Shown: positions 28,509 to 34,048, counted from the stretch's first letter. The stretch is 64,000 bases of DNA from Octopus sinensis (GCF_006345805.1 NC_042997.1:97030001-97094000); one strand, 5' to 3'. Numbers and translations are program-made. Notes: generated by a model not told the origin, from the letters alone.

Positions 28509-28644
28509 CTGTGCACCAACCATTCCTTCTTTTAGTCGTGGAATATCGGTTTGTGAAACTTCCCAAACTTTGTCCAAGCTGCTGTTAAAATCGGTTTTAT
28601 TCACTCCAGTATATATACGAATTCTGTATGGTAAATCATTATGC
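28509..28644 (-). CDS. DPEP1: Membrane dipeptidase (peptidase M19, DPEP1-like) coding exon: (G)HNDLPYRIRIYTGVNKTDFNSSLDKVWEVSQTDIPRLKEGMVGAQ
   Basis: Minus strand TTTTGTAG|G CAT AAT GAT ... GCA CAG|GTAAAG; 136 nt, phase 2 to 0. Contains the HND metal-ligand motif and the TDIPRL..G.VGAQ motif of renal dipeptidases. Symbol is family-level, not tested orthology. Confidence 0.93.
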
Positions 28645-29782
28645 CTACAAAAATAAATAAGTGATAAATAAATAATAGTATAAATATGATATAATAATTT
28701 TACTGAAAGATATTCACGCATACTTTGAAAATTTGCATTTATTTTCATAAAAGAACAAAGTATCTATTCCTCCAAAGATAATAATAACTTCAAAAATAGA
28801 AAAGCAGGTGGTTTTAAAAGAAGGCTTAGAAGCTGAAATACTATTAACAACTGAAAGCAATAAATACACACTTTCATGATAAATGGAATAATAAATTGAT
28901 TCTTCTTTTCTACGGGAAAACTTAATTACATTTCGCTATTCGGTGCATTACAATCTTTGAGAAATACTTTTATGATATTTAATTACGACTTTTTTCTGTT
29001 TCCCCGGTTCAAATACTGCTGAGATCAACTTCTCTTTTAATTTCTCCGACCACTTAACTGCTGTAGTCAAATGAAATCCTCCATCGAATACCATACTTTA
29101 TTGTCAGTAAAGCAGCGTGCTTTTGTTAGAAATTAATTTGTTTATTGTTCTAAAAAGACAATGAATTGTCGGCGTCGGTAAAACGTCGAATGTTCATTTT
29201 AGTGTCAATCCTCTACGTCGCATGTTTGAATTTTGCCTCATTCAACTTTGTCGTTCATCTTACTGAGTTTGATAGAACAAAATACTTGTAAAGTACTGGA
29301 GTCGATTTAATTAAACAGCCCCCGCTCCAAAATATTGCTGGTCTTACGCGTAAAACGGTATTTAATTAAATAACACAAGGGATTTTTACTCGTCACTCTA
29401 CCGATTACAATTTCTAACGCTTTTTTACGATATGTACAAGGCTTGAAATTTTGTGGGGAGATGTTAGCTGATTACATCACGACCCCAGTACTCGACTATT
29501 ATTATTAAATCGATATATGAACTATTAGCATTATTATTAATAAATCGATATATGAACTTCGAATGCAAGGTCAAACTGAAGTGTTTGACCCGAACAAAAA
29601 AACATAGTGTAATAGGTGTACAACAACATGTAGTAAACGAATATGAAAAAAAATGCGCGCTCAGGAACGGGGGATGGGGGAGAGGACTCGGAAAATTTAC
29701 ATCATCACCATGACCTTTAAACTCCAGTATTTGACCCGAGCAACAAAAAAAGTTTTAAATAGTGTAAGGTCGACTTGGCCTT

Positions 29783-31436
29783 GGTGAACTGGGCACCAAC
29801 AGTGCCGGCAGCGTCGAGGCAGCCCGATGCTGCTGTCTCTTAAGGTAACCATACCGTGAGGGCGGGCGACCCCGGTACTACCTTGTTGTGGTGAGAAAGT
29901 TTACACCCTTTGAGAGAAGAGCAGTTAGTGATGGCATGTCCAACTCGCGCAGGTCCCTCTCGTACGAGAGTAGCCAAAGGTACCGAACCCCCACCCCCCG
30001 GCTGCCGTGAAACCGGAGCCCCGAGATGTTGTTGGGTCATCTCGAGTCGTGCGATAGCCCACCCCGGAGAATCGGCCACGATCGGGGCACCCGTCGGGTA
30101 CAAGCCGACCAACTAGGCGCCGGCCCGTAACTGGTTGCCGTGGGTCCGCACCGGCGTCGAACCCGGGATAGTACGGTTACCTGGCGACACAGATGGCACC
30201 TCCCCACCCAAGTATACCGGGCGTTTAGGTAAGGTCGTAATCGTAGCCTCTGTTGGTGCAGATCAGTGTGGAGACATACTCCCTGGACGGGTGGTTCGTC
30301 CACGAAAGCCGGACGTCCCGCAATTGTATGTAGACTCTCACTTCACCTGTGGTGGACGGGTGTTAATGTGTAGTCATGTGTTGAAAGCCCCATCAGAAAC
30401 GCGACTTATAGGGTCCCTTCCTTTCGATCACACCAATTATAGCCGCACCCGGGGATGGTTAGATGGATCCGACATGCGCACAGCCACCGACCACCATAAA
30501 ACACTGGGTGATTAGGTGCGGTTATGATACGTGCATCGAGGGGTTTGCAGCCGATCCCGTAGGCGAATGTATTCACCCTTTGGACGCATGATTCCGTCCA
30601 CAAAAGCCGAGGCCCCACTTGACCTCCGCTCAGTCGCCGAAGGCCTACGAAAAATAGGCGGTGGTGCTGCCCACTATAATATACCAGAGCATCCCGATGA
30701 GCGCCAAGTTTCGGATTGAGTGGCTCCGTCCACTATAAAACACCGGGGTGTTGGGGCAGATGACCCTTCTGCTCCGGTCACGCCCTTCATGTCGCACTAG
30801 TTGGGAAGCTCTTTCCTTTGACGGGTGGCACCGCCCACCTTAATACACCGGCACCCCAGGGTCCCCTCCGCCCATTACTGGCCTGCACGGGCGTTAGGAT
30901 TCGGTGCTGGAGAGAGCCACGGTCACCAAAAGTAGGGGCCCTGATGTGCGGCCAATTTTTCCCGGGTCTGCCGTTGGGGTTCCCTACTGCCTCGAAAGCG
31001 ACCTGCACACAGGAGAGGTCAAGCGTCGGAGAGCACCAAGCTCGATCGACCCCTCCTTGTGAGTCCCCCGCTGACACTAGGTTGCAGAGGCGATCATGCA
31101 TCTTAGCCCGCACGTTAGTTGGGCGGCCTGCCAGTAGGCGATGGCGTATCTCTCAAGGCGCGACGGCACCGTCCACGGTTAAAAAAACGGGACCGGCTTC
31201 GACTTATTCGTGTGCGCGTTAGACTCGGCTCTGGTGTATTGCGACATCACCACCCGATGGACAAGGTGCACGTGTAACTATTTGACGTTATGCATCGGGA
31301 AATAACCCACGTTACAAATGGGGATGAGCGCCGCCGCTGTGCCCTGTAGTAGCCGTCTTGGAGACCACAGAGCACCGCTGCGGTACTCTTTCCCTAGAGG
31401 GAAAGAGTGCCTTGCGGTACGTGCAGTTAGCCATAT
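29783..31436 (+). other. Unclassified GC-rich, highly structured, apparently non-coding insertion
   Basis: Hand counts of four sample lines give 45-63% GC against visibly AT-rich flanks. Dense local stems have G-U pairs on the + strand; repeated pseudoknot modules; only short ORFs with no recognisable protein. Confidence 0.75.
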
Positions 31437-31443
31437 GCCTCGT

Positions 31444-32000
31444 CATCTAATTAAGTACATCTAATTAAGTACCAGTGAAACAATGGAAATCGATGTAATT
31501 GACTAAACCCTCGCCAAAAATTTCAGACCTTGTGCCTTTAGTAGAAAGAATAGTTACTGTGTTCGTCCGTCTTAAACGCACTCTGAGTTCAAATTCTGCC
31601 GGGGTTAATTTTGCCTTATTATTGTTAAGGCAACGAGCTCGTAGAATTGGACATTCTGCGTTCAAATGCTGCCGCATTCGACTTTGCCTTTTAACCTTTC
31701 GGCGTCGATAAAACAAGCACCAGTTGACTACTGAGGTTGATTTAATCGACTTATCCCGTCCCCCAAAAGTGCTGGCCTTGCACCAAAATTTGAAAATATT
31801 ATTAATGCGGTGAGCTGGCAGAATCGTTAGCACGCCGGACAAAGTCCTGAGCAGTATTTGTCCATCTTCACGTTCTGAGTTCAAATTTCGCAGACTTTGC
31901 TTTTCATCCTTTCGGGATCATGAAATATGTATCAGTCGGGTACTGGGGTCGTGATGTAATCAGCTAACATCTCCCCACAAAATTTTAAGCCTTGTACCTA
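31444..32000 (+). mobile_element. Cluster of family A SINE pieces (tail at 31444-31550, further copies to about 32000)
   Basis: TAATTAAGTACCAGTG...CCTTGTGCCTTTAGTAGAAAG tail and GAGCTGGCAGAATCGTTAGCACGCCGG heads. Confidence 0.8.
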
Positions 32001-34048
32001 TTGTAAAAAAAGCATCAGAAATTGTAATCGGTAGAGTGACGAGTAAAATTCCTTGTGCTTTTTAATTAAATACCGTTTTGTACTGAGTTCAGATCCTTTT
32101 ATTGTTCGTTCACCTTTCCTCTTTCCGCTACAGCTGTTATCGATATAATCAACCAATTCCCTATGTCTTAATGTGTCAAGGTAAGAAATAAATATTACTC
32201 TGGGGGTGTTACAGAACGAAAAAAAAAGATAGTATACGGGACAACATATCTTATCGTATTTAATGGGGTTTTTTTTCTTTTTGTTCTGAGTTCAAATCCC
32301 TCTGATAAAGACATTTTTTTTATCGTTCTGAGTTTTATGAAAGAAAAACAGTGACGTACTAGAATCTATATAATCATCTATACCTCCAACCAAAATATGA
32401 GAACGTTTATCTATCAATGTTAGAAATTGAAAATTATTGTTGAAAGCAGTAAATGGCAAAACTGATAGAGCGTCAATCAGAAAATGCATTTTACTCCGTT
32501 CTTGTCGAGTGTCAATCAAAAAGAGATAAGAATAATTTAATAACAGTTGAATAATTCTGAAAACTGCAGAACACAAACCATACTTAAGTTGGTAAGTGAA
32601 AAAGTCCTTTAGCATAAATTAGATGGCGATTTACTGACGATGGCGAACATCTATGGTAAACAACTTCGGGTGTGCTTTTGGTCTTTTAAAACCTTAACTT
32701 GGGTATAGTCCATTCACAACCGTCATGCCTTCTCGACGACAAATAGATACAGATTTTTGTGTGAAAATAATTCAGGTATTCCCGTAATTTTATTTTCAGT
32801 AACTGGATTGCTGCCGCGCTGGGGCACTATCAAAAAAGGTTTAGTCGATCGAAGTGATCACAGTCATAACTTTTTATTTTTAGTCTGATAGCTGATCCAT
32901 ACATCACTTTTTGTTGAGCTGTTAAGTTACGGGGGACATAGACACACGCCAGTTGTCGAGTAAGGAGAGACAAACGCAAACACAAATACTTAGATACACA
33001 CACGCAAAGATACAGATACAGACACAAGCACACAAATACAGACATACACACACATACACACACAATCATGGCTGGTTTCTGCACAGTATCCGTCGACCAA
33101 ATTCATTCATAAAAACGGTTTTGTTGTAGATGATACTTCCCCAAGGTGCTACTCTATGGAACGGAACCCGTAATCACATAGATACAAAGATCTTGTTAAC
33201 TACAGCCATACGTGTACCATGCCTCATAAGAGAAATTTAATTAATAATCTTGAAAATTCCATACATTTTATTTTGGTGAGAATGAGCTACACAATCGTCA
33301 TAGAATCCACCTCAATGGAACGTGCCTTGACAAAAGCTAAATGAAAATATTTCCGTTCAAGAATTGAATGAGTTGCACAATGTTACCGTGATATGATGAC
33401 GATTTCTTTCGTAAGCACAGAGCAACTGGTTTTCGTCGAAGAATGAGACAGCGAAAATTTAATGACATTTTGAAAGATAATTAGTTCCATTAATTTGTTA
33501 TTATTTAGCCTCAATTAATTTATCATGGAGTAGAACGCTGAGCATTCCAGCCAAGGCTATCCCGTCATTTATATAGGATTAGTTATATAAGGCTCTATTA
33601 TGTACAGTTCCTTTACGGAAATTAACTGATAGAATCGCTTGCACGACGGACAAAGTGTTTAAGAGTCGATAGTAATCCATCATTTGAATTAGATTCGACC
33701 TCTATTTCTAGCAGATTGAGAGACAACTTAGATGCTACCTTAATGTTGTTGAGTGTGAATAATGGACTTAAGCAATCCAGCTATGACCATTTCATCATTG
33801 TTCAAAGGTACATCATCCATGTCAGCATCATTTTCATTAATCTTTTAAAAAATGATAAAGCATCAGTAATCAACTTAGGGTCCACAAGATAGCACTGGTT
33901 GTCTCTTAGCTGTGTTCAAAATATCAAAAGGCTTTTGTTCAAAATATAGATACAATTATAGTTACATACCTTCCAACTAAGAAATAAAACTGGGAAAATG
34001 AATTTGTTATTACTTTATAAAATCGGCTTGTTGGATATATGGCTTTCA

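What the first reader, a model, noticed from the sequence alone, without database searches (positions are those of the whole stretch)
29783..31436. 1.65-kb GC-rich, ORF-less, densely folded RNA-like island of unknown family inside the dipeptidase locus
Composition switches sharply from AT-rich to about 55-60% GC with abundant CpG. Stems read by eye on the + strand: TTGGTG/CACCAA (29781-86/29794-99); GGCAGCGTCG/CGATGCTGCT (29807-16/29825-34, two G-U); nested AAGGTA/TACCTT + TACCG/CGGTA + GGG/CCC (29842-29884); palindrome CTCTCGTACGAGAG (29957-70); CGAGATG/CATCTCG (30022-28/30038-44); a 13-bp GGTACTCTTTCCC/GGGAAAGAGTGCC stem (31382-94/31399-411, one U-G) extended by ACCGC/GCGGT. The imperfections are mostly G-U on +, which would be A-C mismatches on -, so the + strand (antisense to DPEP) is the likely folded RNA. 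No recognisable protein, TIR, LTR, poly(A) or collinear rRNA core. Inference: a retro-copied or endogenised large structured RNA (virus-, satellite- or viroid-like, or a new ncRNA), or a new non-autonomous mobile element. Contamination or an artificial insert is not excluded.
Basis: partly seen in the sequence, partly recalled or inferred. Interest (0 to 1): 0.9.

Follow-up and report, generated by a model that had tools for sequence, protein, structure and literature searches.

The report
GC-rich non-coding insert splitting a SINE
A 1.66-kb GC-rich, gene-less stretch is a genuine insertion into an old short repeat about 1 kb upstream of a dipeptidase-like exon. Apart from one terminal palindrome it folds no better than shuffled sequence, so it looks like unclassified mobile DNA rather than a large structured RNA.

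Summary
The composition island is real: 57.8% GC against 34% in the host, and it is the only long run above 50% GC in the 64 kb. It is non-coding. Stop codons number 108 in six frames against about 115 expected, there is no 3-base periodicity, and Pfam, Rfam and the DNA searches find nothing.

It is an insertion. Sequence on its two sides is adjacent in the window's other SINE copies, and the flanks rejoin best at 29782|31443 (T|T, no duplication needed).

The headline claim, "densely folded RNA", fails. But 300-nt windows give z between -1.8 and +1.7 on both strands. The full-length z of -3.2 falls to -0.8 once the 3' palindrome is removed, and that palindrome is just as strong on both strands (z -6.0 and -6.2).

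Two copies weakly resemble a viral frameshift site in Rfam, but a pseudoknot reading shows no covariation.

Best reading: one copy of an unclassified non-autonomous mobile element, Helitron-like or solo-LTR-like. No cephalopod genome could be searched, so copy number and family remain untested.

The parts
29783..31442 (.). The inserted GC-rich, non-coding DNA. It is 1660 nt if there is no target duplication. The right end is 31436 if 31437-31442 (GCCTCG) is a decayed copy of the target GCCTT.
   Evidence: GC 0.578. Best rejoining of the flanks against 11 SINE copies is 29782|31443. Unique within the window. No Pfam family in any of the six frames at E <= 10. No Rfam family at E <= 1.
29767..29782 (+). 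Left target: the piece of an old SINE that ends at the insertion point (AGGTCGACTTGGCCTT).
   Evidence: 15 of 16 identical to the SINE copy at 14747(-). Only 1 of 200 shuffled queries scored as well, and only in the + orientation. It aligns in register with 12 SINE copies.
31443..31560 (+). Right target: the same SINE resumes (TCATC...) exactly where the left piece stops.
   Evidence: Local alignment score 91 against the window's SINE copies; 0 of 200 shuffles reached it. Alignment; blast hits.
31372..31424 (.). Subterminal palindrome: a 13-bp core (31382-31394 / 31399-31411) extended by outer pairs, ending 18 nt before the right junction.
   Evidence: MFE -34.6 kcal/mol with z -6.0 on +, and -31.8 with z -6.2 on -; 0 of 200 shuffles did as well. 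It is the only inverted repeat clearly beyond chance.
30190..30226 (+). Motif copy 1 of 8.
   Evidence: CM R1 23.7 bits; alignments A4 and A6.
30286..30318 (+). Motif copy 2 of 8.
   Evidence: CM R1 21.5 bits.
30477..30513 (+). Motif copy 3 of 8.
   Evidence: CM R1 29.4 bits.
30584..30616 (+). Motif copy 4 of 8.
   Evidence: CM R1 22.5 bits.
30657..30693 (+). Motif copy 5 of 8.
   Evidence: CM R1 33.9 bits.
30716..30752 (+). Motif copy 6 of 8, the best-scoring copy. As it stands: TTGAGTGGCTCCGTCCACTATAAAACACCGGGGTGTT.
   Evidence: CM R1 38.5 bits. Direct-repeat pairs with >= 18 of 22 matches: 4 observed against 0.03 in shuffles, reached by 0 of 100.
30821..30857 (+). Motif copy 7 of 8. It overlaps the weak Rfam RF01079 match at 30812-30850.
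   Evidence: CM R1 36.2 bits. RF01079 18.6 bits against a gathering score of 50, E 2.4.
31159..31197 (+). Motif copy 8 of 8. It overlaps the weak Rfam RF01079 match at 31151-31190.
   Evidence: CM R1 25 bits. RF01079 16.4 bits, E 8.7.
31444..31471 (+). Perfect 14-nt tandem duplication (CATCTAATTAAGTA x2) one base after the right junction, inside the SINE.
   Evidence: TRF score 58, 100% matches.
28509..28643 (-). Neighbouring gene: a dipeptidase-like exon (HNDLP...GAQ) followed by a GTAAAG donor. An in-frame ATG lies at 28748.
   Evidence: The six best of the seven PDB matches are dipeptidases, aligned to their residues 20-63 or 36-79, with best E 0.06. Translation and donor site. Not detected by Pfam.

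Best explanation
The island is one copy, or one fragment, of an unclassified non-coding and therefore non-autonomous mobile element. It landed inside an older SINE about 1 kb upstream of a dipeptidase-like exon.

Shown: it is an insertion, it carries no coding remnant, and its only strong fold is a strand-symmetric palindrome 18 nt from one end. Its interior holds eight same-orientation copies of a ~37-nt motif.

Inferred: it was delivered by a transposition mechanism that leaves little or no target duplication. The two best-fitting kinds are these:
- A rolling-circle (Helitron-like) non-autonomous element, in which the subterminal palindrome would be the end signal. This fits insertion between T and T without duplication.
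- A solo LTR. This fits TG at 29782-29783, CA at 31432-31433 and a possible 4-5-nt duplication (GCCT). The repeated TATA-containing motif would then be promoter or enhancer repeats.

On either reading the palindrome and the motif act at the DNA level, or as ordinary transcription signals. They are not a large folded RNA.
For: - Insertion: the left flank ends with a 15/16 match to the SINE family, and the right flank resumes at the very next SINE position. The best rejoining is 29782|31443 (mean score 47.8, against 39-40 for joins that remove a GCCT duplication).
- Foreign composition with edges sharp to within about 20 nt.
- Non-coding.
- Subterminal palindrome with z about -6 on both strands.
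- Dispersed direct repeats far beyond chance, all on one strand and confined to 30190-31197.
- T|T insertion, no duplication and a 3' stem-loop are listed features of Helitron-like elements (PMC11417382). Helitrons and Ty3-like LTR elements are both annotated in Octopus vulgaris (PMC13282606).
Against: - No second copy or fragment in the 64-kb window, and none in any collection searched. These collections cover the host lineage only thinly: a control with a Penelope-like ORF found just 11 relatives.
- No canonical termini. There is no TC...CTRR. The candidate 13-15-nt terminal inverted repeat is not significant, and the palindrome lies before it rather than after it.
- On the LTR reading, 3 nt separate the CA from the candidate duplication.
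- Dinucleotide odds ratios are all within 0.86-1.13, so there is no strong compositional signature of any source.
Confidence: 0.5

Rival explanations
1. Non-coding DNA captured during repair of a chromosome break, with no transposition machinery of its own. The source could be a piece of the host's own GC-rich spacer DNA (an rDNA intergenic spacer with repeated promoter-like units, for instance) or foreign DNA.
For: - The flanks rejoin without any duplication.
- A perfect 14-nt templated-looking duplication sits one base from the junction, in an otherwise diverged SINE.
- No termini of a known transposon class.
- The island is unique in the window.
- Dispersed repeats that contain TATA-like cores are the sort of thing spacers carry. 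That comparison is from general knowledge and was not tested.
Against: - No rRNA or other known RNA gene fragment adjoins it.
- No source sequence could be found.
- A bacterial source is unlikely, because 1.66 kb of bacterial DNA would almost always carry recognisable coding sequence.
- The subterminal palindrome is better explained as an end signal of a mobile element.
Confidence: 0.2
2. One reading: a retro-copied or endogenised large structured RNA (virus-, satellite- or viroid-like, or a new ncRNA) read on the + strand.
For: - All eight motif copies are on the + strand.
- Two of them weakly match Rfam RF01079, a putative viral frameshift site.
- Four copies can be drawn by hand as a small two-stem pseudoknot, with one double change (CTG/CAG in the copy at 30657-30693).
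- The full-length + strand has z -3.2.
Against: - The fold excess disappears without the terminal palindrome (z -0.78), and that palindrome is strand-symmetric.
- Local windows are at chance, and hairpins are no commoner on + than on -.
- The pseudoknot gives 71% paired cells against 71.1% in shuffles, and a covariation score of 0.152 against 0.137, reached by 159 of 500 shuffles.
- The Rfam matches are far below threshold (E 2.4 and 8.7). No ribozyme, tRNA-like or other family was found.
- It is not rod-like: no long-range self-complementarity.
- There is no poly(A) and no long target duplication, as a LINE-mediated retro-copy would have.
Confidence: 0.07
3. Not biological at this locus: an assembly chimera, a contaminant, or an artificial insert.
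For: - The flanks rejoin exactly, with no duplication.
- No relative was found anywhere.
- Dinucleotide odds ratios are near 1, and the stop-codon count is as in random sequence.
Against: - Internal structure is clearly non-random.
- No match to plasmids, phages or E. coli.
- Host sequence continues in register on both sides, which a simple chimera would not give.
Confidence: 0.1
4. Resident host regulatory DNA, a GC-rich promoter or first-exon region of the dipeptidase-like gene, rather than an insertion.
For: - It lies about 1 kb upstream of the first recognisable coding exon on that gene's strand.
- It contains TATA-like cores.
Against: - It splits a SINE precisely.
- CpG is not enriched relative to base composition.
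- No signal-peptide-like ORF with a donor site was seen on the minus strand.
Confidence: 0.05

Closest known systems
Helitron-like rolling-circle elements (HLE1 = canonical Helitron; HLE2 = Helentron/Helitron2), non-autonomous copies
   Same: - Insertion without a target duplication.
- Insertion point between T and T, as described for HLE2.
- A strong stem-loop a few nucleotides from one end.
- No coding capacity, as in non-autonomous copies.
- Size in range.
   Different: - No 5' TC or 3' CTRR (HLE1).
- No significant 12-16-nt terminal inverted repeat.
- The stem-loop lies inside the candidate right repeat rather than after it (HLE2).
- No family copies and no Rep/helicase partner could be looked for.
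Solo LTR of an LTR retrotransposon (Ty3-like elements are annotated in octopus)
   Same: - ORF-less and 1.65 kb long.
- TG at the left end and CA near the right end, within an 8-nt imperfect inverted terminal match.
- A possible 4-5-nt target duplication.
- Internal same-orientation repeats with TATA-like cores, as in U3 regions.
   Different: - The CA is separated from the candidate duplication by 3 nt.
- The duplication is imperfect, and the flanks rejoin better without it.
- No canonical AATAAA signal was seen by eye.
- No partner LTR or internal region was available to compare.
Rfam RF01079 (RF_site3, putative RdRp ribosomal frameshift site)
   Same: Two of the eight motif copies align end to end with the 39-nt model. 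Four copies can be drawn by hand as a small hairpin plus a downstream 3-bp pairing.
   Different: - Scores are 18.6 and 16.4 bits against a gathering score of 50.
- There is no open reading frame to frameshift.
- There are eight copies rather than one.
- No covariation beyond shuffles.
This is a resemblance only.
3' ends of stringent-type non-LTR retrotransposons (CR1/L2/RTE-like)
   Same: A stem-loop close to one end and no poly(A); such elements are often 5'-truncated.
   Different: No reverse-transcriptase or other ORF2 remnant in 1.66 kb, and the element itself has no short tandem-repeat tail.

Membership tests
   300-nt windows give z from -1.8 to +1.7 except at the 3' end. Without the palindrome, z is -0.78. 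Host controls give z from -2.1 to 0.
   The palindrome has z -6.0 on + and -6.2 on -. Hairpin counts are no higher on + than on -.
   Rfam gives 0 hits at E <= 1 and only chance-level hits at E <= 10. The motif pseudoknot shows no covariation beyond shuffles. Covariation across species is not testable here.
Viroid-like or deltavirus-like circular RNA | Rod-like or branched self-complementarity, and self-cleaving ribozymes | tested here: not met
   There is no long-range inverted similarity. Long-range pairs are as in shuffles on the + strand. No ribozyme family was found in Rfam.
Helitron-like element, HLE2 | Insertion between T and T without target duplication | tested here: met
   The best rejoining of the flanks against 11 SINE copies is GCCTT|TCATC at 29782|31443. 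A decayed 5-nt duplication cannot be excluded.
Helitron-like element, HLE2 | Terminal inverted repeats of about 12-16 nt | tested here: inconclusive
   A by-eye candidate exists: 29782-29796 against 31421-31433, 11 of 13 matches plus a 2-nt gap. The best local alignment of the two ends, however, is no better than random pairs drawn from the island (16% of them score as high).
Helitron-like element, HLE2 | [quoted passage not shown] | tested here: not met
   A strong stem-loop exists, but it lies before the candidate right repeat. Definition taken from PMC11417382.
Helitron-like element, HLE1 | 5' TC, 3' hairpin plus CTRR, insertion between A and T | tested here: not met
   The ends read GG(TG)... 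and ...CTCG, and the junction is T|T. Only the hairpin is present.
Helitron-like element (either group) | Family of copies sharing both ends, and an autonomous Rep/helicase partner | not testable with these tools
   No cephalopod genome collection was available, and the window holds one copy.
Solo LTR | 5' TG ... CA 3' with short inverted ends | tested here: inconclusive
   TG lies at 29782-29783 and CA at 31432-31433, with a 6-of-8 inverted terminal match read directly. This is not statistically distinguishable from chance.
Solo LTR | 4-6-bp target duplication directly abutting the ends | tested here: inconclusive
   GCCT occurs at 29778-29781 and at 31437-31440, but 3 nt lie between the CA and the right copy. 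Joins that remove a duplication score lower (39-40 against 47.8).
Solo LTR | Related full-length element with two such LTRs around gag-pol | not testable with these tools
   No second copy in the window, and no host genome to search.
LINE-mediated retro-copy or processed pseudogene | Poly(A) or simple-repeat tail, and a 7-20-bp target duplication | tested here: not met
   Neither end has a tail. There is no tandem repeat in the island and no long duplication.
TIR DNA transposon | Significant terminal inverted repeats and a class-specific duplication | tested here: not met
   The 147-nt inverted repeat further out (29352-29498 / 31933-32079) consists of SINE 3' parts, not element ends.

The most novel reading that the evidence does not exclude
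The island is the DNA copy of a previously undescribed non-coding RNA, or of a mobile element that works through one. On this reading its + strand carries an array of eight small pseudoknot-like modules, each a 4-5-bp hairpin whose loop pairs with a CGG a few bases past an A-rich stretch. These resemble viral frameshift or exonuclease-stalling knots, and the array ends in a long terminal hairpin. The present data neither support nor fully exclude this, because eight paralogous copies are too few for a covariation test.
Probability: 0.05. Interest if true: 0.75.

Novelty: new member of a known kind. Interest (0 to 1): 0.3.

Why it matters
If the best reading holds, this is one more unclassified repeat in a cephalopod genome that is about two-thirds repeats. 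It has modest local interest because it sits about 1 kb upstream of a dipeptidase-like exon and is bracketed by an inverted SINE pair.

It would matter more in two cases. If genome-wide copies showed a new terminal architecture for a rolling-circle or other element class, that would be worth describing. If it proved single-copy and foreign, it would be a candidate horizontal acquisition.

The main value of this check is negative. GC richness plus stems found by eye does not make a structured RNA. The shuffled controls and the strand-symmetry test remove that reading.

Tried and rejected
- Rfam at E <= 1 over 29000-32200 gave nothing. At E <= 10 over the island it gave only sub-threshold hits.
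- tRNA and tmRNA scan: none.
- Pfam on the ten longest open frames, and on all six X-marked frames at E <= 10: nothing.
- Sensitive blastn against plasmids, phages and E. coli genomes: nothing.
- Word-indexed protein search with the 152-codon frame: nothing.
- Exhaustive phmmer with the 132-codon frame: one hit, which is an ORF read through a tandem satellite with six repeated stretches. I rejected it as an artefact.
- Exact look-ups of four island ORFs in public assemblies: none on record.
- Eight exact-pattern scans, four of viral contigs and two each of metagenome and prokaryote genome contigs: zero hits.
- Attempt to fetch the orthologous locus through the dipeptidase exon: no candidate proteins. 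The window's own Penelope-like ORF is not on record either.
- Literature searches on octopus repeats, cephalopod rDNA spacers and the Logan run accession behind the 99% Penelope-like relative (sought to name the host species) gave nothing specific.
- Tandem-repeat and bacterial promoter/terminator scans were uninformative.
- The 147-nt inverted repeat further out was considered as transposon ends. I rejected this because its arms are SINE 3' parts.
- The pseudoknot model for the motif was tested and is not supported.

Full report
**1. The observation**

The composition switch is real and sharp. GC is 0.578 over 29783-31436, against 0.335 and 0.353 in the flanking 10 kb. In 40-nt steps the change happens within about 20 nt at each edge. 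No other stretch of the 64-kb window stays above 0.5 GC for more than about 200 nt.

"Abundant CpG" is only a consequence of base composition. CpG observed/expected is 0.93 in the island and 0.89 in the whole window.

The island is non-coding by every measure available:
- It has 108 stops in six frames. About 115 are expected from its base composition (my own calculation).
- The longest open frame is 152 codons, which is about what chance gives. There is no 3-base periodicity.
- No Pfam family matches the ten longest open frames, nor any of the six X-marked frames at E <= 10.

**2. Folding**

Their number is close to chance, though. Stems of at least 6 bp (G-U allowed, loops of 3-14 nt) number 69 on the + strand against 60 +/- 12 in shuffles, and 90 on the - strand against 67 +/- 13.

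The energy tests agree:
- Sliding 300-nt windows give z from -1.8 to +1.7 on both strands. The exception is the 3' end (31133-31582), where z is -2.5 to -2.75 on + and -1.9 to -3.3 on -.
- The full length gives z -3.2 (+) and -2.3 (-).
- Six host stretches of the same length give z from -2.1 to 0.
- With the last 66 nt removed, the + strand gives z -0.78 against shuffles that preserve local composition.

The whole excess therefore comes from one element, the palindrome at 31372-31424. It is equally strong on both strands, with z -6.0 and -6.2. Rfam has no match at E <= 1, and there are no tRNA-like genes.

**3. What is non-random inside**

- Pairs of 22-mers with at least 18 matches number 4, against 0.03 in dinucleotide shuffles. 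None of 100 shuffles reached that.
- The pairs resolve into eight copies of a ~37-nt motif at irregular spacing, between 30190 and 31197.
- A covariance model built from the eight copies finds only those eight in the whole window, all on the + strand.
- In the alignment six columns are invariant, four of them the tetranucleotide CCAC.

At E <= 10, Rfam places two copies on RF01079, a putative viral frameshift site. The scores are 18.6 and 16.4 bits against a gathering score of 50, with E 2.4 and 8.7.

Following that lead, I drew the motif as a small two-stem pseudoknot. Four copies keep both stems and one shows a double change. The formal count gives no support, however. Paired cells are 71.0% against 71.1% in shuffles, and the covariation score is 0.152 against 0.137, reached by 159 of 500 shuffles. 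Single copies fold no better than shuffles. The motif is a sequence repeat of unknown role, and the RNA-knot reading remains only a lead.

**4. It is an insertion**

The right flank from 31443 is a clear member of the SINE family that fills this window, with a local score of 91 that no shuffle of 200 reached. The last 16 nt of the left flank match the same family 15 of 16, in the same orientation, a score reached by 1 of 200 shuffles. The two pieces are adjacent positions of the SINE.

I scanned all joins of the two flanks against 11 SINE copies. The best is 29782|31443, reading GCCTT|TCATC, with no duplication needed. Its mean score is 47.8, against 39-40 for joins that treat GCCT as a target duplication. 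The insert is therefore either 29783-31442, or 29783-31436 followed by a decayed 5-nt duplication.

One base after the junction the SINE carries a perfect 14-nt tandem duplication, in place of its usual hairpin segment.

The two ends of the insert share no significant inverted repeat. There is no poly(A) or tail. The island has no other copy or fragment in the window.

**5. Context**

A dipeptidase-like exon lies at 28509-28643 on the minus strand. The six best of the seven PDB matches are dipeptidases, aligned near their N-termini, with best E 0.06. The exon ends CAG|GTAAAG, and an in-frame ATG lies at 28748. The island is therefore about 1.1 kb upstream of this exon on the gene's strand, and antisense to it if read on +. 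No further dipeptidase exon was found between 24 and 37 kb.

**6. Relatives**

None was found. The full list of searches is in the tried-and-rejected field.

These collections barely cover the host lineage. As a control I searched with the window's Penelope-like ORF. It found only 11 relatives, one of them 99% identical on a 1.2-kb Logan contig. Absence of relatives is therefore weak evidence about copy number.

**7. Interpretation**

The anatomy has five parts: a clean insertion, little or no duplication, no coding capacity, a strand-symmetric palindrome 18 nt from one end, and internal same-orientation repeats. It fits a non-autonomous mobile element best, and I put that at about 0.5 overall. 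Within that reading there are two main candidates.
- A Helitron-like element has the best partial fit: a T|T junction, no duplication and a subterminal stem-loop (criteria from PMC11417382). It lacks the canonical ends, and the stem-loop is on the wrong side of the only candidate terminal repeat.
- A solo LTR is the other candidate, based on TG...CA, a possible GCCT duplication and TATA-containing repeats. The ends and the duplication do not abut cleanly.

The rivals, with my probabilities:
- Break-repair capture of host spacer or foreign DNA: 0.2.
- Assembly artefact or artificial insert: 0.1.
- Structured RNA copy: 0.07.
- Resident promoter region: 0.05.

**8. Verdict**

This is a real but ordinary-looking feature of unknown family. 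The striking part of the finding, a dense RNA fold, is not supported. The decisive evidence is copy number, shared ends, an empty orthologous site, reads spanning the junctions and stranded expression. It needs cephalopod genome and read data that these tools do not hold.

Noticed in passing
window 29352-29498 and 31933-32079: A 147-nt inverted repeat, 92.5% identical, made of two SINE 3' parts in opposite orientation that bracket the island. The arms are far more alike than other SINE copies in the window (67-80%). In a transcript they could pair as a long double-stranded RNA, a possible A-to-I editing substrate in a coleoid.
   Followed up: partly
window 31444-31471: A perfect 14-nt tandem duplication (CATCTAATTAAGTA x2) one base after the right junction. 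It replaces the hairpin segment that other SINE copies have there. It may be a repair footprint of the insertion event.
   Followed up: partly
window 29573-29620 and 29719-29766: A direct duplication about 146 nt apart (73% identical over 48 nt) in the AT-rich left flank. The second copy runs into the SINE piece that abuts the island.
   Followed up: no
window about 2000-8000: A block of TA-rich microsatellite-like sequence with 5-18% GC. It yields long spurious Tyr/Ile-rich ORFs on both strands.
   Followed up: no
window 16600-18908 (+): A Penelope-like retroelement. The ORF at 18114-18905 is 99% identical to the product of a 1.2-kb Logan contig (SRR9105617). It has a weak GIY-YIG match, and its relatives carry PF01541 and PF26215. 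This suggests a young, possibly expressed family. A second similar stretch lies on the minus strand near 21-23 kb.
   Followed up: partly
window 28509-28748 (-): The dipeptidase-like exon is preceded in frame by an ATG and a hydrophobic stretch that could be a signal peptide. It may therefore be the first coding exon. No close protein is on record in the 5.8-billion-protein collection.
   Followed up: partly
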